Shown here: piece after piece, positions 2,351 to 37,095 of the stretch
Layout of the letters: each line of letters starts with the position of its first letter
Numbering within the stretch: position 1 is the first letter of the stretch
Origin: Heteronotia binoei
Lineage: Eukaryota
Length of the DNA: 64,000 nucleotides
Reading direction: 5' to 3'
Assembly: GCF_032191835.1 (NCBI RefSeq)
Contig: NC_083237.1
Location: 7,440,001 to 7,504,000, forward strand
Translations under genes and position numbers: made by a program
Notes under the pieces: generated by a model
Database searches by the model: none
The model's input: the letters and a program-made list of their open reading frames with translations, nothing else
What the model was told of the DNA's origin: nothing

Positions 2351-3021
2351 TGGCCAAACGACCGTTGCACATTTCAGCTGGTCCCCAGCACAGAGAGGGT
2401 TATTACTCCTTACTCCCCACCCCACAAGTGATAGGGGACGCTTCCCTGTCAGTGGCTGTCACCCTCCACTGCCTCCTTTGTTTCCCAGAAAAATGCAACG
2501 CTGCGTTCCCCAGCTGCGTCTATCCTGAATTTGGGGGTAGGGCAGGGAGGCCAGAATATGTGCGGAGGGAGCGTGACTGGAAACAGAAGAGTGAAAACCA
2601 GCTGCATGCTATAGTGCATTTTCTAGCTGTGATTCAGCTGCAGGAAGAGCTGGGGTTTTCGTTCCAAAAAAAAGGAGAACATTCGCGTCTTCTTTGCACC
2701 AGCATTTTACCACCAGAAGAGCTTTTACTACTGCTGAAGCTGCATTCGTTTAGTCGCAGTTTGAGGTTAAATTCAGTTGCGTTACTCAAGACAGAGCCTT
2801 CAGCCCATTTCAAAATACCTCAGGGGAACTGCTGGAAATTGTACTGAGCCCTGGGCGCACAGGAATTGGGCAATTCATAAATTCAAAGTATAAATAAATA
2901 AACAAACCGAGGCTCTAGGGATGGCACGGACAACAATATTAGGCCAGAGCAGGGGTGGCCAAACTTGCTTAATATAAGTCACATAATATAAATGTCAGAT
3001 ATCTGAGAGCCGCAAAAACAC

Positions 3022-3158
3022 NNNNNNNNNNNNNNNNNNNNNNNNNNNNNNNNNNNNNNNNNNNNNNNNNNNNNNNNNNNNNNNNNNNNNNNNNNNNNNN
3101 NNNNNNNNNNNNNNNNNNNNNNNNNNNNNNNNNNNNNNNNNNNNNNNNNNNNNNNNNN
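3022..3158. other. Assembly gap (137 N) inside a hAT MITE (2950-3325)
   Basis: Run of N. Flanked by CAGGGGTGGCCAAAC / GTTTGGCCACCCCT ends. Confidence 0.99.
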
Positions 3159-3914
3159 GGGAAGAAAGCAACCTTAACATTAAATGCATTCTCCAAACCA
3201 CTGGCTGGCTTGCCTTGGAGAAGTGATTCAAAAATGAAAATGCCTTCTCGAAGGTGGCTGACAGGGTGGCAGTGGCTTCAAGAGCCACACAATATGTGCG
3301 AAAGAGCCACAGTTTGGCCACCCCTAGGAGGCTGAAATCAGTTCCTAGTTCCTTATTTGTGACCTATTCATGAAATCATCCCCAAACATTGAGGTGAGTT
3401 TAAAAGCTCTGAACCCCAAAATAAGGTGTGGGCCACCATAAATGAGACACCCCCACATTAAGGAGACTCTTCTCCTTCCAGGGGGCAGTTGGGTGTTTCC
3501 AGGGTTTTGTTTGAGCAGGAACGCTCAGGAACACAGTTCCAGCTGGCTTGGTGTCGGGGTGTGGCTTAATATGTAAATGAGTTCCCGCTGGGCTTTTTTT
3601 AAAAAACAAAAAGGCCCAGGTGTTTCCTAATCCAAAGCACAGGTCTCATGCCAGTTGTTCCGAAGCAGATCAGCTCAGGACAATCACACAAGCAGACACT
3701 AGGGTTGCCAAGTCCTTCCGCTGCTGCAGGGGTGGACTGTTGTGCGTGTGGCACAATGACATCACCTGGAAGTGACATCATCGCAACAGGCCACCCCTGT
3801 TCTAGCAGTAGATTCCTCAATGATCTTGCCTAATCACTGCTAATAATACAGTGGGTTGTATTATTGATTTCATGTCATGGTGAGTTCCACAGGAAAAGCT
3901 AACTTCCTTAGGCG

Positions 3915-4438
3915 TAGGGTTGCCAGAGACAATTCAAGAAATATCTGAGGACTTTGGGGGTGGAGCCAGGAGAAAGGTTGTGATAAGCATAATTGAACTC
4001 CAAAGGGAGTTTCGGCCCTTTCACTTAAAGGGACCGCACACCTTTGAAATGCCTTCCCTTCATTGGAAATAATGAAGGATAGGGGCACCTTCTTTGGGGG
4101 CTCATAGAATTGGACCCCCTGGTCCAATCATTTTGAAACTTGGAAGGTGTTTTGAGAAGAGGCATCGGATGCTATGCTGCAGATTTGGTGCCTCTACCTC
4201 AAAACACGCCCCCCCCCCCAAACCCTAGTTACTCACAGTTCAATTCTCCATTATATCCTATGGAAATCAGACTCCATAGGGAATAACAGAGTGCCCAGCA
4301 GACATTTCCTCTCCCCACCCCCGCTTTCTGATGACCCTGGGTTGTAAATAATGGAGGAGAACCAGAGTATTAGCCTGACATTTGTTCAGCCATCTTATAA
4401 AACAATCCCCTGCCCCCACCTGGGGATTGGCAACCCTA
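3915..4438 (+). mobile_element. hAT MITE (TAGGGTTGCCA TIR family)
   Basis: TIRs TAGGGTTGCC/GGCAACCCTA and a perfect 8-bp TSD CTTAGGCG. Other copies at ~6200-6475(-), 25401-25809, 44011-44540 and 44687-45150(-). Confidence 0.85.
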
Positions 4439-12370: not shown

Positions 12371-15026
12371 ATTTTTACTCTCCCAAGTGCTGTTTTTTGT
12401 CCTCATTTAAAGACCCAGGATAGGCAGGGAAAGACCTTTGCAGCTTTTCCAGTCCCATTAGAAGTGTCCTGTTAAGTTTGGCTCTGTGCCTGCTGAGGGA
12501 TGACCCAGAGGGGGTAAAGCATGCCAGCTGTGCGAGTGTGAGTGTTTGGGCGCAGGAACGTGCAGAGAAACGTCTCTTGAAAGTTTCATTCCTAGGCCAA
12601 AAAACAGAAGGTTGTCTCTTCCCACAGGCATCAAAACGTATGTGGCTGCGATACAAAAAGAGGGAGGGAGGGAGGGCGGAAGTCAAACGGCTGTTAAGTG
12701 GACGGTTTCCTTCTTTTTCTGTCAGTTGCAACCAGTCCTTGCGGTGGTGCGGTAGACCATTCTCCCCCATCATCTAGCTCCAGACGCCTTTGATAATCCC
12801 AACCCCTCGTCTTTTGCAGGGTTTGCCTCCGAATCTGCGTTGCTCTTTGATGTTCGCCATTTGGTACAGGCTGGCATTAGCCTGTTCTGGCTGCCTCACA
12901 GAGCATACCCTTCCCAAATATCCTTACGCACCATTGCATTCTCTGGTTCCCACCCAATTGACGCGGAGGCTGTGTGCACAGCGTGCAGAACCTAATGCGA
13001 ACGGAAAAGGTTATTGTCAGCTGCAGGGCAGCGAGGATAGAGGGGAACGAGGCAGGCCAAGATGAAGGTGTGGTTGACTAGGAGAGAATTTTTTGTGAAA
13101 TGCTGTTGAGCTTTGCGGCCTCTTTCCCCACATGCTCACTTAGGAGAAAGAAAAGAACGAAACCGGATTGTGGTGGGCAGTGAGAGACTGGGATATAGGC
13201 AGGGGAGCTAATTTTCGTACCAGTGCAGCTGCAATAGAATGAATAAGGAGGCAGAAAAAGAAAATAAAAGGGGGTTGAAACGCAAAAGGGGTGACCAAAC
13301 GGAGGGTGTACAGGGACATAAAACAGGTAATGGAGTTTGTATTCGTAGGGACATACTAAAGATAGTACCGAAGGATAGGAGCATTAAAAGCGATTGAGAA
13401 AAGAGCATGAATGTATGAGTAAAGCATAGGAACAGGGCAGTGGTATGCAAGGGAAGGGAGAACAACCTGACCCTCCAGAAGAGGAAAAATTGGCAGTGCC
13501 CAGCCTGTCTAGGTGTCCCCTGTGGGGGCCCTGCTCAGGAATGCGTGTGCAGCTTTGGTGTGTGTCTATGCGTGTAGGAGATCCAGCCAATCAGGGCAGA
13601 AGGGGGGAGTACGGGGGTGTGGCGGCTGGCAGCAGGGTGCACATCCTCCCCCTCTTGCACACACACACGAATACAAAGAGCTGCACGCACGACCTTCCAG
13701 TATCCTTTTCCCGGGACGGATGGAATTGGGGGTGGGGGTGGATCTGGGGATGGCAAAGGGAGGGAGTGAAAGAAGAGGGATCCCAATTCTCTCTTGTTTG
13801 TGTTGGCCTTTCCAGGGAAATATACGACATCCAGAGAAAGGGTTGTACGTGACAGAAGGGGGGGGGGAGGGAAGCAGGAGAGCAGAGCGGGGATATGCGT
13901 GGCAAGAAGAGATGTACATAGAAGTACAGAGCGACTACGTAGGTTGATGTAAATGGATATGGTGAAAATAAGGCAGGCAAGAGTATATGTTGTAATGAAT
14001 GGGTAAGTGTACAACTGTATCAAAGGCAGATCGTATACATTGGTACCTGGATGAGTTGCACATTTCTGCATATTGTCATGTCTGCTTCTCAAACGGGTTT
14101 TAAAGAGAGGACAAGAATTTTTGACATTTTGTTGTGGCTAAAATGGAGCTTTCTAATCAGAATTCCATATTGAGAGTAGTAGTTATTCCTGGTTTCTTAA
14201 TCCTGGATAACAGTCTGCTCTTCTGTGTGTGCTCCTACAGTTATATAGGAGGGTTTATGGAGCGGAATTTATTTTTAAAAGATTGTTGAGAGAACGAGTA
14301 TCCCAGTTATACTCACAGTGGTGTGTGAACATGATCAGGCTTCCAGAGGAGTAATGTATGCATTTGCAAGGGAAATTGATACACCTCTTCTTATCTCCAT
14401 TTAATCTTGATTTTGTTGGAACAAGGGATGCTTAGAGAGTTGCAGATATTTATTCAATACCCCCTGAGGTGACAAATGTGTGTTAACATGCATTAATCAT
14501 CCTTTTCCCACACAAATGGAGAGAGACTGAAGAGTGTAGGGCACTGGGGGCAGAGTAGATTTCTTCCATCCCAGTTTTTTGTTCTGTATTACCTACCATT
14601 TAAGAGTGGGAAAAGCAGTTTACCAGATTTCAGTTCATCTGATGTGCAAGCTTGAGGCATAGAATTCCTGAGGCGGCTATGCACACGGACGTTCAGACTA
14701 TTAAACCGGAAAATGTGTACTATTTTGTGTCATAGGATTGGATCTAGACTTTAGAAAATGGGTTATTTAAGGCCTACAGATACGTAAAATGGCAAGAAAT
14801 TATCCTTAAATATGACAAAGAGCTTGTTGGTCTCAAAGATGCTACTGGACTCAGCTATAACTTCTTAAATATGAATGTGACTTGACCGTAAGGAAAATAG
14901 CTTGGCTTTTTAATGGTGCATTGAGAAGGGAAGGCTGAATACGTAGTTCTGAAGCTACAGATAATTCATGGGATCTTTCACAGAGGACAGTTATGGGGAA
15001 TATGTGCGTTGGGGAGGTACCAGTTG

Positions 15027-15240
15027 AACATATATATGAAGCTGCCTTATACTGAATCAGACCCTGGGTCCATCAAAGTCAGTATCGTCTACTCAGACTG
15101 GCAGCAGCTCTCCAGGGTCTCAAGCTGAGGTTTTTCATGCCTATTTGCCTGGACCCTTTTTAGTTGGAGATGCCGAGGATTGAACCTGGGACCTTCTGCT
15201 TCCCAAGCAGATGCTCTACCACTGAGCCACCGTCCCTCCT
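15027..15240 (-). mobile_element. Second tRNA-derived SINE family (Squam2-like)
   Basis: Head GGTGGCTCAGTGGTAGAGCATCTGCTT...GGTTCAATCC on the - strand. Copies at ~38555-38750(-), 39444-39652(+, inside CR1) and 57968-58170(-). Confidence 0.75.
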
Positions 15241-15779
15241 CTATGAGAGTTTGTGATGGAGTTATGAGGGTTTGGGATGGAGTGAAATGTTATCTGAAAA
15301 TATGGAATTAAATGTGAAGCTGAGAAGGACAGTCCTTGTTGGTGCTCTGTTGGCAGGAGACCTTGTGGCAGGACAGCCATTTTAAGTGTCGGGTTAAGCC
15401 CTTGGCATGACCTTGTCCATTTTTGTTAGTCGGTTAACCTGACTTCAGGGACAAAATAATCTTATTTCTTATCAAGATTGGTAGCCATGTTTGTCTGTAG
15501 CTCCAGAAAAGAGCCAGAGTCCAGTAGCACCTTAAAGAGTGACAACATTTTTGACAGGGCAGGAGCTTTTAAGAATCACTGCTCTCTTCCTTCAGATACC
15601 CTACCACAAATATTGTGTCTGGTGCTTGTGTTTTGCAGTAGTGGTCCTGGATATGGTGATCAGAACGCCACTTTGGGTTCTGTCGGCCCCTCGTCTATAA
15701 GGGACGTCTCTCTGGAGAAAACTGGGGCCACGGAAGGCAAAACTCCACCAAGTAGGGGTTGTACAGTCAGACAGCCATG

Positions 15780-16200
15780 AAAGGACGCCTGGCCTCGCAC
15801 ATCTCCCTAAAGAGCCCCTTCTCCTCTGCGTCCATTCCTTTCCCCGCCTCCTTCTCAACCCCTGGCCGCGGTGCAACAGCTTGCAACCAATCGGCGGCTT
15901 TTGGCTTCTTGGCGGCGGCCAATCGGCGCGGCGGAGAACGCGGACCGTTCTGTTTGTACACGGCTGCGGCGTGCGCTCCTCTTCCCTCCCGCGGTGTACA
16001 CGCGGGATAGAACGCGGGGGAGCGCAACGTTCTGAACCGTGGCGCTCCGGGACAAGAAGCACGTCTGAATTCTGCTCTTCTACTCGCTCTGGGCGCACGG
16101 GATTTTAAAAATGCGAATCAGTGATTTCCTGTTCAGGGGGGAGGGACTCGGACCGACGGACCTATAACTCGGAGAGAGTGCATTTTTTCCTCTGTCCAGC
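15780..16200 (+). promoter_or_regulatory. C14orf93 CpG-island promoter / non-coding exon 1 region
   Basis: High CpG density, with two CCAAT boxes at 15887 and 15919 (32 bp apart). The exon 1 donor was not identified. Confidence 0.65.
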
Positions 16201-16749
16201 GCCCTTTTGCTTTCACCAAGGCAGCGCTGTGAATGTGTGGGCATTGAGTGATGCAAGAAAAACTTTGCAGAGCTGCGCTCGCTGAGTTAAAGTCCCTGAA
16301 ACGTTCCTTTGCATGTTCAGATGTGCAAAAGACTCCGAAACTCACAGTTGCATGACTTATGCTTTTGAGAAGAGATGCGTTGTGACCTGACCGTGGTGCC
16401 CTTAGCTCTCTGTTGAAAAGGCACTCTAAATGCCTAAATGGTTTAGAATAGGGCAAGGGATGTGTTAAAAGTGTCCAGGAAGATCAAGGCAACTACCCAA
16501 AGCGGCCTGGAGTTTGTGACATTTAGTGTCAATTTAACAATGTGGAAGCAGGAAATAACTTTCAGCCTGGGGTCATAGAGGTGGTGAGCAATTGGTATTC
16601 AGAAGTGCCTAAATGTAGGCCTTTGGATTTTCACACCCTGTCCAAAGTTGCCTGCTCTCTAGTCACACTAACAAAAGCATTTTTAAAATTTTTCTTGACA
16701 TCCTGTTTCCCTCAGCTTAGGCCAGCGTCTGCTTTGCCCTAGCTATTCC

Positions 16750-17106
16750 ATGGGCCTGAACCCCAAAGACTACATTGGCAGCCTGTTCGGCCTTCTTCAA
16801 AAGCAGAAAATTCCCAGAATCCCTTGGAACACCCTGAGGGGTCATGTCCTTCAGTGCCACCATTTTGTTCTCCCCTCCCAATGCCAAAGAAGCCAAATGC
16901 TGTTGCTGCACTTGCAAGCAGGAGCCTGGCGCTCCACCGGCAGCCCCGGCGCCGCCTCCGTCCCCACCCTGCACTCCCATCACCGTCACGGGGACGGGGC
17001 TGGCTGTCCAGTCTTCGGAGCAACTCCTCCATGTCATCTACCAGCGAGTCGAAAAGGCCGTGGGCCTGGCCGAGATGTCGCTGAGTTTGGCCAAAGCCAA
17101 CAATGA
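16750..17106 (+). CDS. Candidate upstream-overlapping ORF (118 aa) in an alternative frame of C14orf93
   Basis: First AUG of the exon (acceptor ~16715), CCATGG context. 12 of the first 14 codons end in G/C. Translation is unproven. Confidence 0.4.
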   Translation: MGLNPKDYIGSLFGLLQKQKIPRIPWNTLRGHVLQCHHFVLPSQCQRSQMLLLHLQAGAWRSTGSPGAASVPTLHSHHRHGDGAGCPVFGATPPCHLPASRKGRGPGRDVAEFGQSQQ

Positions 17107-17356
17107 GGCCCTGCAGCGCCTAGAAGAGGAAATGGGGGTGCTGCGCCAGGCAACAGCCCCTCCCGTCAAAGCTAGCCCTTTGTGTGTTCCAGTGGAGCAG
17201 CGAGAAGAGAACGAGGAGGAGGAACGAGAGGCCGAAGGCTTCCAAAATGGCGTCCAGGTGGTCATAGAAGAGCTGAGGCAGCTGGGAGCAGCCGCGGGGC
17301 CACCTGGACGCTTGGGTTTCTCTCCCGTGCAGCTGGGAGCTGGGGGGCTTGGCGGG
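16844..17356 (+). CDS. C14orf93: C14orf93 (RTFC) coding exon 1
   Basis: MSFSATILFSPP...CCCCTCK...TPITVTGTGLAVQSSEQLLHVIYQRVEKAVGLAE...GVQVVIEELRQLG. Donor GGG|GTACGT. The 3' boundary is less certain. Confidence 0.9.
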
Positions 17357-19483
17357 GTACGTAGGTGGAGGATTATGGGCTTTTGGGGGGAAAATTTCTT
17401 CCAACCCCATACGCACAAAAAAACCCTGCACGCACATGATCCCCATGTCCCTCCGGTCAGGCACAGATGGCCTCATGAATATTTGATGGCCTCTCTTGCC
17501 TTCCCTGCCAAAGACCTGCTCAGGAGAGAGGCATTCTGGGAGTCACGCCAAGCTCCGCTTTGCTGTTGTGGCCTGGGGTTGAGGGACCCTGGCAGGAGCT
17601 GAAAAGTGTTGTGTGTGCATACGATCCCGAGGCTGGTATAGAAACGGGACTGGAGCTGTTAGTGGTGATTGAGGGGCATTGGCAAAACCATGGACTGGGG
17701 AAATGCAAGGTTAGCAGCAGAATGTTTTCACGCACGATGCTAAAAGGCACCTTTGGGCTTCCCATTTTATTTGTGTCAAGTGTGAATTTGGTCCCTGTAA
17801 TGGGAGGGGGGGAGCAATGTATGTTTGATATTACCAATGCAGACCCGTTGAATAAAACAAAGTCTTTCCTGAGGCAGTGTATGCAGGAAGGAAGCTATAG
17901 GGCAGAGGTCCCCAGCCATTTTGAACTTACACCGTTAGAAGTTCAGGCACAGTGGGAGGGGGGGGGGGGGTGCAACATCAAAATGGCTGCCACCGGAGGC
18001 ACAGCCAACTGCAAAATGTCAGAATGAGATTATGCATAATTCTGCTAGTAACTCTTCAACATTTGAGGCAGAAGCTCTGCTTTAACAGATGCCTTTTGTA
18101 AATGGCCGTATTATCTTATAATTCTGTCTTGCATACACTCGGCTTCCTGTCAATCATACAGTGAAGAACCCTGTGTTGTGGTGGCAGCCACTGACAAAGC
18201 AACGTTTATTTTAAGTCAGCACAGCCAATCAGAATACCCTCTGGGAGAGAGCTCCGACTTGCTCTGGCCACTTTTTAAAAACGCACGATGTTCTGGGATG
18301 GCACCTGGAAAGATGCCAGCAGGAGGCATGGTACCCAGGAATCCCATGTTGGACTAGATGGCCTGTATGGCGCCTTGCAATTCTGTCATTCTGTGATGCT
18401 GTGGACAGTGTTCTCTCTAAGCTGAGTTAGTGCGAGCTAGCTCACTGTTTTTTAGCCTCTGGCTTATACATTTTTGTCTTAGTTCAGGAAGGAGGGCCCC
18501 AGAACAAAGTAATTTATGCCAGGGTGTCAAACATGCGATCCGGGGACCAAATCAGGCCCCTGGAGGACTCTTATCAGGCCCCTGAGCAACTGGCTGTCAT
18601 CCTCTCCCTTCTCCCTCTGTCTTGCTTCCTTCTGCATAACAGCTTGCTTTGCAGGGCTTGCTCAATCACACAGGCGCTACAGAGCAAAACCTCTGTTTTC
18701 TCCATTGGCTGAGTCTCCTCCCTTGGGGAGGAAGGAGGGGGAGGCAGAGCTTGTTTTTCCAGGTTCTCTCAATCGCACAGTAGAGCTACTGAGCCAAGCC
18801 TCTCTTCCTTCTATTGGCTGAGGCTCCCCCCAGTCCCCTGGGGAAGGAAGGAAAGAGCCAGAGCTTCCTTTGCCCAGTTCCCTGGATACCACAGGAGAAA
18901 TACAAAGAAAGCACCTTTAAGATCAACAAGTGCTAATGTTTTAAGCATGTCTTAAGTTTAAAAAAAAACATATTTAATTGTGTTTGTCCGTGTCCTTTAT
19001 AAAGTTTATATCTCTGCTACTTAATCTAAAGAGGTACACACATGGCCCAGCCCAACATGGCTCAGCCCAACCCGACATTGCCCTGCCCAACAAGATCTCA
19101 TTTATGTCAGATCCGGCCCTCATAACAAATGAGTTCGACATCTCTGATTTATGCAGTAGCTCACAACTTTCATGCCAGTAGCTCACCAAGTGGAATTTTT
19201 CTGTATTGGAAAACACTTGGTGACTTTCCGGGGGCGGGCAGATCTGGGAGTGGGCGGGGTTTGGAGAGAGGCCTCAGCACGGTACAATGCCACAGAGTCC
19301 ACCCTTCAAAAAAGCCATTTACTCCAGGGGAGCTCAGCTGGAGATCAGTTGTAAAAGCGGGAGATCTCCAGGCCCCACCTGGAGTCTGGCAACCCTAAGT
19401 GGGGAATAACACCAGGGCTGGAAGGGTCTGTCATTTTGACTGAGGGCCACCACTGAGGGTTGCTGAAATCTTTCCATCCTCAG

Positions 19484-19741
19484 GTAGCAGAAGACTCCTC
19501 CACAGTAGATACCTCCCTGCAGCGGGTCTACGCTGCACCCTCTTCTCCAGTCTCTCAGACAACTCTACCGGCTCTGGACGATCCTTCTCTCTCTTGCCCT
19601 GAGGTGTCTCCCAACAGCACCACCCTGGAGGATGCTCTGCATGGGGAACCACGTTTCTCTCTGGGCTTTGCAAGTCTTCCTTGCAGAAGCCGAAGCATTG
19701 GGCAGAAGAACGCCAGGCGCAAGAGGGACTTGGTCCTTTCG
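19484..19741 (+). CDS. C14orf93: C14orf93 coding exon 2
   Basis: ctcag|VAEDSS...GQKNARRKRDLVLS|gtgag. The C-terminal part matches human KNSRRKRDLVLS. Confidence 0.88.
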
Positions 19742-19824
19742 GTGAGTTGACTTCTTTCACTGGCTGGCAGAAGAGATTCTTTTGTTCGAGGAACCGGGGC
19801 CTCTGCAAACCTTTTATTTCAAAT

Positions 19825-20288
19825 CAGGCCTTGAATTCAGCAGGAGCTCACAGGAGCACAGCTCCTGAACCTTTCTGAGTGTTCCCCTTCCTCCTCCCCA
19901 CCTACCTTGTCCATTGAATAGTAGGTGCAGCTGCATAACAATCCCTGGATTAGGAGAGTGGGCAGCCAGCTACCAGGAGCTTTGCCACACCCCAGCAGCC
20001 CTCATTAACCCCTGGAGAAGGCCATGCCATCTTTTCTCCACTTATGTGATTTTGGGTGGAAGGTGGCTTGCTGGCCTTTTGACTGTGGGGGGAGGTGAGC
20101 AAGAAGAGCCCCAGGTGAGCGAGGCCTGCTTGGGCTTGTTGGCTCTCTAGCCAGTCCAAGCAGACCTCGCTTGCCCGGGGCTCTCCTTTCTTGTGTCGGG
20201 TTGCTTGTGGCTGGTGGTGTTGGGCAGCATATGCTAATGAGTTACGCTAATGAGCTCCACCACCTATTTTTCTACTGAACGGCCCCTG
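19825..20288. mobile_element. hAT MITE in C14orf93 intron
   Basis: CAGGCC.../...GGCCCCTG ends with a perfect 8-bp TSD TTTCAAAT. Confidence 0.8.
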
Positions 20289-20400
20289 TTTCAAATTATT
20301 TCCAATTATTTTGCACAGGAGTATTGCTCCATGTTAATAGCTTTGGTCTGTTGAGTTGAAGCTGAGGCTCGGTTCCTGATCTTTCCGTTTCCTTTTCCAG

Positions 20401-20462
20401 AAACTGGTTCATAATGTCCACAATCACATTGCCAATGACAAGAGGTTTGACGGCTCAGAGAG
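20401..20462 (+). CDS. C14orf93: C14orf93 coding exon 3
   Basis: ttccag|KLVHNVHNHIANDKRFDGSE-AG|gtgag. 62 nt. Confidence 0.95.
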
Positions 20463-20710
20463 GTGAGTTTTGGCTGGGGGTTGTCTGTTTCCATAAGAAA
20501 TAATCTTATATAATCTGCCCCTTGCACCAAGGAACTGAGGGAGGCATATATGATCTTTTGCTTTCCACTTCAGTCTCACAACAACCCTGTGAAGTAGATT
20601 TGGGAAAGAAAGTGTGGGGCTGACCCCAGTTTACCCAGGGAACTGCATGCAGTGTGATTGCAATCTAGCCATTAAGCCACACGGACTCATAATAAGACTC
20701 TTATGCTCTT

Positions 20711-34720: not shown

Positions 34721-36693
34721 CCTCAAAGCCACATAGTCCAACAAAAAAGCGTTAGAGCTGTGGCATTGAACTCATATGTTATGAGGGCCAGATCTGACAT
34801 AAACGAGGCCTTATCGGGGCAGGCCATGTTGAGCTGGGCCATGTGTGTACTTATTTAAGATTAGGTAGCAGAGACATAAACTTTATAAAGGACACAGACA
34901 AACACAAAGATTTTTTTTAAAAACCCTGAAAATAAAAATGCTTAAAACATCAGCACACATTGGTCTTAAAGGTGCTTTCTTTGTATTTCTCCCATGACAT
35001 CCAGGGAACAGGGCAAAGGAAGCTCTGGCTCTTTCCTTCCTTTCCCAGGCGACCGGGAAGGGTAGGCGCCTCAGCCAATAGGAGGAAGAGAGGCTTGGCT
35101 CAGTATCTTCTGTGCAATTGAGAGAGCCTGGCAAGGCAAGCTCTGCCTCTGCCCTTCCAAACCAAGGGAGGAGCCTCAGCCAGTGGAGAAAATAGAGGTT
35201 TTGCTCTAGCTCCTGTATGGTTGCACAAGCCTTGCAAAGCAGGCTGTTATGCAAAAGGAAGCAAGAGGGAGGGAGAAGGAAGCAAATGACAGCCAATTAC
35301 TCAGAGGCCTGATAGGAGCCCTCCGGGGGCCTAATTTGGCCCCCGGGCCTCATGTTTGACACCCCTGCCTTACAGCTTGGGCACAATTCAGTTGGGAATG
35401 TTAAAGTGTTTGGAATTAAATTCCTGGTTGCAGCATTACGTACATTAAGAGGGAAGTCGTGACGCTCCCCTTCCCAGGTTGTGCCCCCAAATCTCCAGGG
35501 CTGGCCTAACCATAAGTTGGCAACCCTGTGTCATACTCAGCACACTGCATTGGTGAAGCTGGATTTATTTATTTGCTTTATTTATAGCCTGCCTTTCTTG
35601 CCGCATGGAATGGAAGACCCATGCAGGTATACCCGCTTGACTCTTTCTGGCTGAGACTCAGAATGGAGTCTTGCACTTGAAAGGCCCGAGAAATTGTTGA
35701 ATCCTGAATTTTTGTTAACTAGCAGGAGAGTTCAGCTTTTTTCAAACATTTCAGCCAAAAGTACAATGATTATTTTAGCTTTTACAATAGTGCAGGACAA
35801 GCTCACTCAAGGGGAACAGGAAGTAAGGCCTTCAGTACTGTGCAGAGGCGGCAGTCATCCGTGGAATGGTATTGGCCGAGCATTATAAGCACAGGGTTGC
35901 CAACTTTGGGTTAGGAACATCCTGGAGGTTTGAGGACAGAGGCTGGTGAGGATGGGGTTTGGGGAGGTGAGGCAACTCAGTGGGGCCTAGTGCCCTATGC
36001 ATCACTCCACAAAGCTTTTCCCCAGGGAGCTGATCTCTGTAGTCTGGAGACCTCCGGGCCCCACTTGGAGGCTGGCAATCCTAAGGGTTTTTCTCTGAAA
36101 TATTAGAGGCTATTTAAACTTATCGTGGGCCGTATACTGCATGGGCCTTGAGTCTGAGGACAGTTCTGTCCAGAGCTTTTTCTGTAGCAGGAAAAAACCC
36201 CTGATATAGCCAATCCTCCAAGAGCTCACAGGGCTCTTAGTTCAGGGCCTACTGTAAGCTCCGGGAAGATTGGCTACAGCAGGAGGGTGTGGCCTAATAT
36301 GCAAATGAGTTTGTTACAAAAAAAAAAGGCCCTGGTTCTGTCATCCTCCATTCAAGACTAGCCCTGCCACTAGGCAAACTAGGTGATTGCCTAGAGCGCT
36401 TGTTTTCTGGGCGCACCAAATTGCGTGTCCTCGTGATTTGGTAACATTATCACTGCAGGGTGGGAGCCAGAAATTAGCCTTGCCTAGGGTGCCAGACAGT
36501 CTAGGGTCGGCCCTGCCTCCATTCGAGACAATTCAGCAGGAGAATGTGAAGGAAGAACTGGGCTGGGGGAAGAGAGGTTTGGAAAAAGCAAAATGGGACA
36601 TGTGAGGACAGCAGCGGTGAGTAACTGCAGGGGTGGAATCAAACACGGTATTCTTAGAATGACTAATTATGCTTCCTCTTGTCTCACCATCAG

Positions 36694-37095
36694 CTTTTCG
36701 CAAACCGCTCGGGGGTGGCGCGTCTCCTAGGCCCTGAGGAGCAGCGCTTGTGGCAAGGCGTAACCGAAGAGCTCATGTCGGACGAGGAGGACAGCCTGAG
36801 CGAACCAGGGGTGTGGGTGGCACGCCCCCCACGATTCCGGGCTACTCCCCTCACCCAGCTCTGCTACCGGCTCGACGCCAACTCGAAACACGGCACCAAA
36901 GCAAACCGGATGTACGGGCCGCCCTCGGATCGCTTACCCTCTGCCGAAATCCAGCTTCTGCCCCTCCACCTTTACAACCCCCATTTTCAAGAGGAAGAAG
37001 CCAGGGCTGGCACGCCCCCTTGCCCGCCTGGCCACAAAGGCTTTTGCCCTGACCTCAGCTCCTTTGTGGAGATCAAGGTGGAAAAGGACGAGTGA
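36694..37095 (+). CDS. C14orf93: C14orf93 coding exon 6 (last)
   Basis: atcag|LFANRSGVARLLGPEEQRLWQGVTEELMSDEEDSLSEPGVWVARPPRFRA...FVEIKVEKDE*. Total CDS 1452 nt = 483 aa. AATAAA at 37123 and 37316. Confidence 0.97.
   Translation, partial: LFANRSGVARLLGPEEQRLWQGVTEELMSDEEDSLSEPGVWVARPPRFRATPLTQLCYRLDANSKHGTKANRMYGPPSDRLPSAEIQLLPLHLYNPHFQEEEARAGTPPCPPGHKGFCPDLSSFVEIKVEKDE

What the first reader, a model, noticed from the sequence alone, without database searches (positions are those of the whole stretch)
16750..17106. Candidate hidden microprotein: 118-aa ORF overlapping the C14orf93 start in another frame
Seen: the first AUG in the start-codon exon (acceptor ~16715-16725) is at 16750, 94 nt before the main AUG and out of frame with it. 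No other AUG lies between them. The ORF runs 263 nt into the main CDS. Its non-overlapping part reads like real coding sequence (MGLNPKDYIGSLFGLLQKQKIPRIPWNTLRG; 12 of the first 14 codons end in G/C). Both AUGs have only partial Kozak contexts (+4G versus -3G). Known: overlapping uORFs cannot permit reinitiation on the main AUG, so main-ORF output would depend on leaky scanning. Inference: a bicistronic, dual-coding C14orf93 mRNA making a second small protein or throttling RTFC. I recall no annotation for it.
Basis: partly seen in the sequence, partly recalled or inferred. Interest (0 to 1): 0.78.

Follow-up and report, generated by a model that had tools for sequence, protein, structure and literature searches.

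The report
Unconserved overlapping upstream ORF in C14orf93
The upstream ATG and its 118-codon frame overlapping the C14orf93 start are really there, but related reptiles keep neither the ATG, the frame nor the peptide, so it is an ordinary lineage-specific upstream ORF rather than a hidden protein.

Summary
ATG 16750 lies 94 nt upstream of, and out of frame with, the C14orf93 (DUF4616) start at 16844. It is the only ATG in the 128-nt leader, and it opens a 118-codon ORF ending at 17106.

- **Start codon:** of six other sauropsid copies of this exon, the nearest relative has ACA there and another has CTG. One keeps the ATG but has a 15-codon ORF that stops before the main ATG. Two squamates have no leader ATG, and the turtle has only a short uORF in another frame.
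- **Frame:** leader indels are not multiples of three.
- **Peptide:** the first 31 residues match nothing in any relative.
- **Substitutions:** in the overlap, 18 of 19 differences from the nearest relative fall on main-frame third positions, giving 18 non-synonymous and 1 synonymous change in the alternative frame.
- **Chance:** 38% of shuffled leaders give such an overlapping ORF.

Best reading: a lineage-specific out-of-frame overlapping uORF whose peptide is unconstrained. At most it lowers RTFC translation through partial capture of scanning ribosomes. This is inferred, because the RNA reads were too few to show the leader or its translation.

The scan's notes hold no earlier finding of this kind. 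No human sequence was used knowingly; one contig, L012, may be human and was dropped.

The parts
16695..16715 (+). 3' splice site of the start-codon exon: branch-point-like TTGAC, pyrimidine tract, CAG acceptor (AG at 16714-16715)
   Evidence: Read directly. The T-rich block, the YTNAY motif and the terminal (C/T/A)AG are kept in L001-L006. Use of the site was not shown by RNA, because one search had too few reads.
16716..16843 (+). 128-nt 5' leader part of the start-codon exon
   Evidence: It holds one ATG. It aligns with L001-L003 with indels that are not multiples of three.
16750..16752 (+). Upstream ATG, context TATTCC-ATG-G (-3 T, +4 G)
   Evidence: The aligned triplet is ACA in L001, CTG in L002 and ATG in L003.
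16750..17106 (+). Out-of-frame overlapping uORF: 118 codons plus a TGA stop, 94 nt upstream of the main CDS and 263 nt inside it
   Evidence: No Pfam family and no PDB relative. No conservation of the peptide.
16844..17358 (+). Coding part of the C14orf93/RTFC start-codon exon (171 codons), main ATG at 16844 in context GGGGTC-ATG-T
   Evidence: Pfam DUF4616, E = 6e-71, profile positions 1-177. 96% to 66% amino-acid identity to sauropsid orthologues. An in-frame TGA 9 nt upstream makes 16844 the first in-frame ATG.
17359..17364 (+). 5' splice site GTACGT that ends the exon
   Evidence: GG|GTAYGT (GTGTGA in the turtle) is kept in all seven species.
15870..16040 (+). Candidate promoter or first-exon region: CpG-rich block with two CCAAT boxes, about 700-850 nt upstream of the start-codon exon
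   Evidence: Read. It is the only upstream block that aligns with L002 and L003. Its role is inferred: no RNA reads lay on it.

Best explanation
This is a lineage-specific, evolutionarily unstable, out-of-frame overlapping upstream ORF (oORF) in the leader of the C14orf93/RTFC start-codon exon. It is not a conserved second gene. If the leader is in the mature mRNA, as the conserved 3' splice site suggests, scanning 43S complexes meet AUG 16750 first. Its context (-3 T, +4 G) is only moderate, so some ribosomes should start there and the rest should scan on to AUG 16844 (-3 G). Ribosomes that start at 16750 read 118 codons in a frame under no detectable selection and stop at 17104-17106, inside the main CDS and 252 nt before the next exon junction. 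They cannot reinitiate at the main AUG, and they may expose the mRNA to nonsense-mediated decay. The expected net effect is a modest constitutive lowering of RTFC output in this lineage, with the peptide an unselected by-product. Shown here: the anatomy, the lack of conservation of start, frame and peptide, and the lack of dual-coding constraint. Inferred: inclusion of the leader in the mRNA, initiation at 16750, and any repression or decay.
For: Anatomy. Start codon not conserved: L001 (96% aa and 86% nt identity, the nearest relative found) has ACA and no leader ATG. L002 has CTG there and a different ATG at -8 in the other frame. L003 keeps the ATG but its ORF has 15 codons and stops 34 nt before the main ATG. 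L004 and L006 have no leader ATG. The turtle L005 has a 20-codon non-overlapping uORF at -95 in another frame, plus an in-frame ATG at -54. Frame not conserved: against L001 the leader has indels of 2, 4 and 2 nt and one of 7 nt. The window lacks a 7-nt piece that L001, L002 and L003 all have, and in L003 that piece holds the uORF's TGA stop. Peptide not conserved: tblastn with the first 31 residues finds nothing in any orthologous locus (best E about 0.1), and in L001 the weak matches switch frame. No dual-coding constraint: in the 86 overlapping codons, 18 of 19 differences from L001 are at main-frame third positions. That gives 18 non-synonymous and 1 synonymous change in the alternative frame. 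Main-frame identity is 0.99 and alternative-frame identity 0.79. Third-position divergence in the overlap (18/86) is not lower than in the rest of the exon (9/85). L002-L006 show the same pattern, with 35-46 non-synonymous against 2-3 synonymous changes. Chance: 38% of shuffled leaders give such an ORF. Background from papers: about half of animal mRNAs carry uORFs, and leaky scanning is the way past them (PMC10123092). Out-of-frame oORFs are the most damaging class of uAUG (PMC7253449).
Against: The stop-free run of the alternative frame inside the CDS (258 nt) is longer than in 97.6% of synonymous-codon permutations, and GC3 in the non-overlapping part is highest in the uORF frame (0.68). 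Both are weak signals that fit a very young coding ORF, and comparison with an 86%-identical relative cannot exclude that. An ATG at the aligned spot in both the window and L003 could mean an old uAUG kept for regulation. No RNA evidence shows that the leader is transcribed and spliced as assumed: laid only one or two reads per run on the exon. So 'no effect at all' is also open.
Confidence: 0.75

Rival explanations
1. A young, species- or genus-specific microprotein: the 118-aa product is translated and has gained a function too recently to show in comparisons at 86% or lower nucleotide identity.
For: The ORF is intact and its AUG is the first in the exon. The alternative frame stays open nominally longer than synonymous permutations predict (P about 0.024). 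GC3 is 0.68 in the uORF frame.
Against: No relative keeps the start, frame or peptide. The alternative frame takes 18 non-synonymous and 1 synonymous change against L001. There is no Pfam family and no PDB relative. The overlapping part reads like the off-frame translation of a GC-rich exon. The P value does not survive the 14 frame-by-species tests, where another species and frame reaches 0.029 without any uORF.
Confidence: 0.05
2. An old regulatory uAUG of the C14orf93 leader. On this reading the presence of one upstream start about 80-120 nt before the main AUG is the selected feature. The ORF behind it is free to change (15, 20 or 118 codons), and the window shows the overlapping, strongest-repressing form after a 7-nt deletion removed the old stop region.
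For: An ATG sits at the aligned spot in the window and L003, and the turtle has an ATG at -95 in a similar CC-ATG-G setting. L003's uORF stop lies in the 7-nt piece that the window lacks. More distant copies (L007-L011) also carry one uATG at -113 to -122.
Against: Four of the six sauropsid relatives have no ATG at that place, and three have no uATG in the leader at all. Leader alignment between clades is only 51% identical, so homology of the ATGs is uncertain. An ATG in a leader of this length is expected by chance (1.5 expected). The near-identical contigs L007 and L008 differ by one A, which switches their uORF between 64 overlapping codons and 5 codons. That argues against constraint on form.
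Confidence: 0.15
3. No role at all: the ATG is not in the dominant mRNA (a different start site or acceptor is used), or almost all scanning ribosomes ignore it.
For: No RNA read shows the junction into 16716 or covers 16716-16739. Exon depth is about 0.5-2 in four RNA runs. The -3 T context is poor.
Against: The branch point, pyrimidine tract and AG are kept in all seven species. A second possible acceptor (TAG at 16740-16742) also lies upstream of the ATG. +4 G gives the ATG a moderate rather than weak context.
Confidence: 0.1

Closest known systems
Out-of-frame overlapping uORFs (oORFs) of vertebrate mRNAs, as classified in PMC7253449
   Same: A uAUG in the leader, no in-frame stop before the main AUG, a different frame, and termination inside the CDS. 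The predicted consequence is loss of main-ORF initiation for every ribosome that starts upstream. The context here would count as moderate.
   Different: That paper deals with human variants and their selection. Here the oORF is the reference state of a reptile genome, it is absent from relatives, and neither translation nor repression has been measured.
[quoted passage not shown]
   Same: An upstream-starting ORF that overlaps the main CDS out of frame and is proposed to limit translation of the downstream protein.
   Different: oSCRIB has peptide evidence from mass spectrometry and in vitro translation assays. The ORF here has none, and it fails the conservation tests for start, frame and peptide.
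Ordinary non-conserved uORFs bypassed by leaky scanning (PMC10123092)
   Same: About half of animal mRNAs have uORFs, and bypass depends on start-codon context. The peptide sequence is usually irrelevant.
   Different: This one overlaps the main start, so reinitiation cannot rescue main-ORF translation. Only leaky scanning can.

Membership tests
Out-of-frame overlapping uORF (oORF) | AUG upstream of the main AUG within the mature 5' leader | tested here: inconclusive
   The ATG lies 34 nt inside the exon behind a conserved 3' splice site. The RNA reads were too few to show the leader in mRNA.
Out-of-frame overlapping uORF (oORF) | No in-frame stop before the main AUG, a frame different from the main ORF, and a stop inside the CDS | tested here: met
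   Distance 94 nt (frame +1). The stop at 17104-17106 ends 263 nt into the CDS.
Out-of-frame overlapping uORF (oORF) | Ribosomes initiate at the uAUG and main-ORF output falls | not testable with these tools
   No ribosome profiling or reporter data are available, only the sequence context (-3 T, +4 G).
Conserved dual-coding alternative ORF or microprotein | Start codon conserved in related species | tested here: not met
   ACA in L001, CTG in L002, no leader ATG in L004 and L006. Only L003 keeps the ATG.
Conserved dual-coding alternative ORF or microprotein | Reading frame preserved (indels in multiples of three, stops absent in relatives) | tested here: not met
   Indels of 2, 4, 2 and 7 nt against L001. 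In relatives the alternative frame inside the CDS ends after 39-371 nt, varying by species.
Conserved dual-coding alternative ORF or microprotein | Purifying selection on the alternative frame: excess of changes synonymous in it, and lowered synonymous rate of the main frame in the overlap | tested here: not met
   18 non-synonymous and 1 synonymous change in the alternative frame against L001. Third-position divergence is 18/86 in the overlap and 9/85 outside it. L002-L006 show the same pattern.
Conserved dual-coding alternative ORF or microprotein | Peptide detected | not testable with these tools
   No proteomic data are available for this organism.
Conserved-peptide uORF | uORF peptide sequence conserved across species | tested here: not met
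   tblastn with residues 1-31 against all orthologous loci gives a best E of about 0.1.
C14orf93 / RTFC (Pfam DUF4616), the main ORF | Significant match to the family profile from its first position | tested here: met
   E = 6.4e-71, residues 2-164 on profile positions 1-177 of 524. Orthologues include named Sphenodon and Chelydra proteins.

The most novel reading that the evidence does not exclude
The 118-codon ORF is a very young, lineage-specific translated product. On this reading a 7-nt deletion removed the stop region of an older short uORF and made it read into the CDS. It now acts as a strong repressor of RTFC and as raw material for a de novo protein.
Probability: 0.06. Interest if true: 0.4.

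Novelty: new member of a known kind. Interest (0 to 1): 0.1.

Why it matters
It matters little. uORFs sit in about half of animal mRNAs, and unstable, unconserved ones are the rule. This case adds one unannotated out-of-frame oORF in a poorly studied gene of one reptile lineage. The useful result is negative: 118 codons, a locally coding-looking start and an overlap with a real CDS do not indicate a hidden protein here. The long alternative frame is what a GC-rich exon gives, and its apparent similarity in relatives is carried passively by the main frame. If the oORF does repress translation, RTFC dosage in this lineage would differ from relatives that lack the ATG. That is testable but of narrow interest.

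Tried and rejected
- **RNA evidence:** four raw-read RNA runs were laid on 14800-20600. Almost all reads were repeat-derived at 90-95% likeness (14994-15575, 18292-19455, 20232-20425). The exon got one or two reads per run, and no joint or loose end was reported at 16716. The transcript's 5' structure stays unproven.
- **Family and structure look-ups for the 118-aa product:** Pfam and PDB sequences gave nothing.
- **Rfam on 15500-18000:** no match.
- **Papers:** none joins C14orf93 with uORFs. The gene literature concerns thyroid function and cancer.
- **A 347-aa minus-strand ORF called upstream in L002:** tblastn finds no conserved counterpart in the window, so it was rejected as a spurious call in GC-rich DNA.
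- **Homology of uATGs between distant clades:** the leader alignment is only 51% identical, so this was left open.
- **Amphibian and second turtle outgroups:** Hyla gave no DNA and Lepidochelys was not on record.
- **Not done on purpose:**
  - Mammal-type hits P0008-P0022 were not fetched, because some could be human.
  - L012 is an ENA metagenome contig whose N-terminus resembles what I recall of the human protein. I took it as possibly human. It was not used again and no conclusion rests on it.
  - The N run in 3001-4000 was left alone.
  - The large representative-protein search was not spent, because the decisive comparison is of orthologous DNA.

Full report
**What is in the sequence.**
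- A pyrimidine tract and a CAG acceptor end at 16715, so the exon starts at 16716.
- The only ATG of the 128-nt leader is at 16750, in the context TATTCC-ATG-G.
- The next ATG is at 16844, in the context GGGGTC-ATG-T. It opens a 171-codon coding stretch that ends at a GTACGT donor (17359).
- That stretch matches Pfam DUF4616, the C14orf93/RTFC family, from profile position 1 with E = 6e-71. An in-frame TGA 9 nt upstream makes 16844 the first in-frame start.
- The two ATGs are 94 nt apart, so they are out of frame.
- The upstream ORF has 118 codons and stops at 17104-17106, 263 nt into the main CDS.

**Is it more than chance?** No.
- Base composition predicts 1.5 ATGs in a leader of this length, and one is seen.
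- 79% of shuffled leaders carry an ATG. 38% carry an out-of-frame ATG whose ORF runs past the main start.
- The exon is 63% GC and holds other off-frame ORFs of 86-126 aa on both strands.
- The '12 of 14 codons end in G/C' remark is true. Over all 31 non-overlapping codons GC3 is 0.68, against 0.52 and 0.40 in the other frames, which is a weak signal at this length.
- One nominal oddity remains. The alternative frame stays open for 258 nt inside the CDS, and only 2.4% of synonymous-codon permutations reach that length. In six relatives the same test gives 0.12 to 1.0. Among 14 frame-by-species tests, another one reaches 0.029 where no uORF exists. I do not treat this as evidence.

**Relatives.**
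- A word search with the 171-residue exon product found 32 proteins. The best were unnamed Logan contigs at 96%, 81% and 80% identity. Tuatara followed at 74% and the turtle Chelydra at 70%, so the window is from a lepidosaur, most likely a squamate.
- I fetched the genomic contigs behind six of them, L001-L006.
- L001 is 86% identical in DNA over 1.4 kb of exon and intron. It is the nearest relative available.
- All keep the splice acceptor, the MSFSATILFSP start and the donor.

**Start codon.** At the aligned position:

| Locus | Aligned triplet or leader state | Upstream ORF |
|---|---|---|
| L001 | ACA, no ATG in the leader | none |
| L002 | CTG | an unrelated ATG at -8, in the other frame |
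| L003 | ATG kept | 15 codons, stops 34 nt before the main ATG |
| L004, L006 | no leader ATG | none |
| L005 (Chelydra) | ATG at -95 in another frame | 20 codons, non-overlapping; also an in-frame ATG at -54 |

No two species share the same upstream ORF.

**Frame.**
- Between the uATG position and the main ATG, the window differs from L001 by indels of 2, 4 and 2 nt and one of 7 nt.
- The window is 7 nt shorter than L001, L002 and L003 between two conserved blocks. In L003 that 7-nt piece holds the TGA that ends its short uORF.
- A plausible but unproven history is that an older short uORF lost its stop region in the window's lineage and now reads into the CDS.

**Peptide.**
- tblastn with the first 31 residues against every orthologous locus finds nothing (best E about 0.1). 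In L001 the two weak pieces lie in different frames.
- The overlapping part does match relatives in the alternative frame, but only as a shadow of the main frame.
- In the 86 overlapping codons, window against L001 shows 19 nucleotide differences. 18 of them are at main-frame third positions.
- Main-frame identity is 0.99 and alternative-frame identity is 0.79. The alternative frame takes 18 non-synonymous changes and 1 synonymous change.
- L002-L006 give 35-46 non-synonymous against 2-3 synonymous changes.
- Main-frame third-position divergence is not lowered in the overlap (18/86 against 9/85 in the rest of the exon). So there is no sign of dual-coding constraint.
- The product has no Pfam family and no PDB relative.

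**RNA.**
It gave only one or two reads per run on the exon and none in 16546-16739.
- No joint was reported at 16716. Most laid reads belong to repeats.
- The exon is therefore expressed at best at a low level in those samples, and the 5' structure of the mRNA is not shown.
- A CpG-rich block with two CCAAT boxes at about 15870-16040 is the only upstream stretch that aligns with L002 and L003. It is my candidate for the promoter or first exon, by inference only. If an upstream exon carries further AUGs, 16750 is not the first AUG of the mRNA.

**Mechanism.** By the scanning model (established knowledge; see PMC10123092 on leaky scanning and PMC7253449 on oORFs):
- An AUG with -3 T and +4 G should capture a fraction of scanning ribosomes.
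- Those ribosomes end translation inside the main CDS and cannot reinitiate at 16844.
- The stop lies 252 nt before the next exon junction, so such rounds could trigger nonsense-mediated decay.
- The remaining ribosomes reach 16844, which has the more important -3 purine.

The best-supported reading is a lineage-specific oORF that at most lowers RTFC output, with an unselected peptide. All functional steps are inferred.

**Comparison with known cases.**
- The kind is well known: out-of-frame oORFs (PMC7253449), with oSCRIB as a case that has peptide and in vitro evidence (PMC8448870).
- This ORF meets the sequence definition of an oORF.
- It fails every testable criterion of a conserved dual-coding gene or conserved-peptide uORF.
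- No paper links C14orf93 with uORFs, and the scan's own notes hold nothing similar.

**Limits and cautions.**
- The nearest relative is 86% identical, so a very young function cannot be excluded.
- I did not fetch the mammal-type hits P0008-P0022, because some may be human.
- A more distant group of contigs, L007-L011, is probably mammalian by its level of similarity. It carries its own uATG at -113 to -122. The near-identical L007 and L008 differ by one A, which switches that ORF between 64 overlapping codons and 5 codons. I use this only to illustrate lability.
- L012, an ENA metagenome contig, has an N-terminus like what I recall of the human protein. I took it as possibly human, did not use it again, and rest nothing on it.

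**Verdict.** Interest is low.

Noticed in passing
window 17446-17560 (intron after the start-codon exon): A noncoding block of about 115 nt, some 90 nt past the donor, is almost identical between the window and L001 while the overall DNA identity is 86%. It is kept in all five squamate contigs and partly in the turtle (the TGGGAGTCACGCCAA core). It contains a CAGATGG E-box-like motif and an ATGAATATTTGATG motif. Rfam gave no match, and the alignment fold showed no supporting covariation (covariation term +1.5). It is probably a DNA-level regulatory element.
   Followed up: partly
window 15870-16040: A CpG-rich block with two CCAAT boxes (around 15887 and 15920) is the only upstream stretch that aligns with L002 and L003. 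It is a likely TATA-less promoter or first-exon region of C14orf93. No RNA reads lay on it.
   Followed up: partly
window 14994-15575, 18292-18679, 18874-19455, 20232-20425: Hundreds to thousands of RNA reads from four runs lay here at 90-95% likeness, with many loose ends and internal joints. These are transcribed interspersed repeats, not C14orf93 exons.
   Followed up: no
L007:340-470 and L008:345-475: Two near-identical contigs from different runs differ by one A in an A-run just after their uATG. The difference switches the upstream ORF between 64 codons overlapping the CDS and 5 codons.
   Followed up: partly
window 16775-16830: Two short leader blocks (TTCTTCAAAAGCAG and TCCCAGAATCC) are kept in the four closest squamates whatever the uORF state. 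This suggests constraint on the leader at the nucleotide level, unrelated to the upstream frame.
   Followed up: no
window 19479-19753, 20387-20499, 36691-36778: These stretches align with downstream parts of L002, L003 and the Chelydra gene. They are probably later C14orf93 exons, which would make the gene span at least 20 kb of the window.
   Followed up: no
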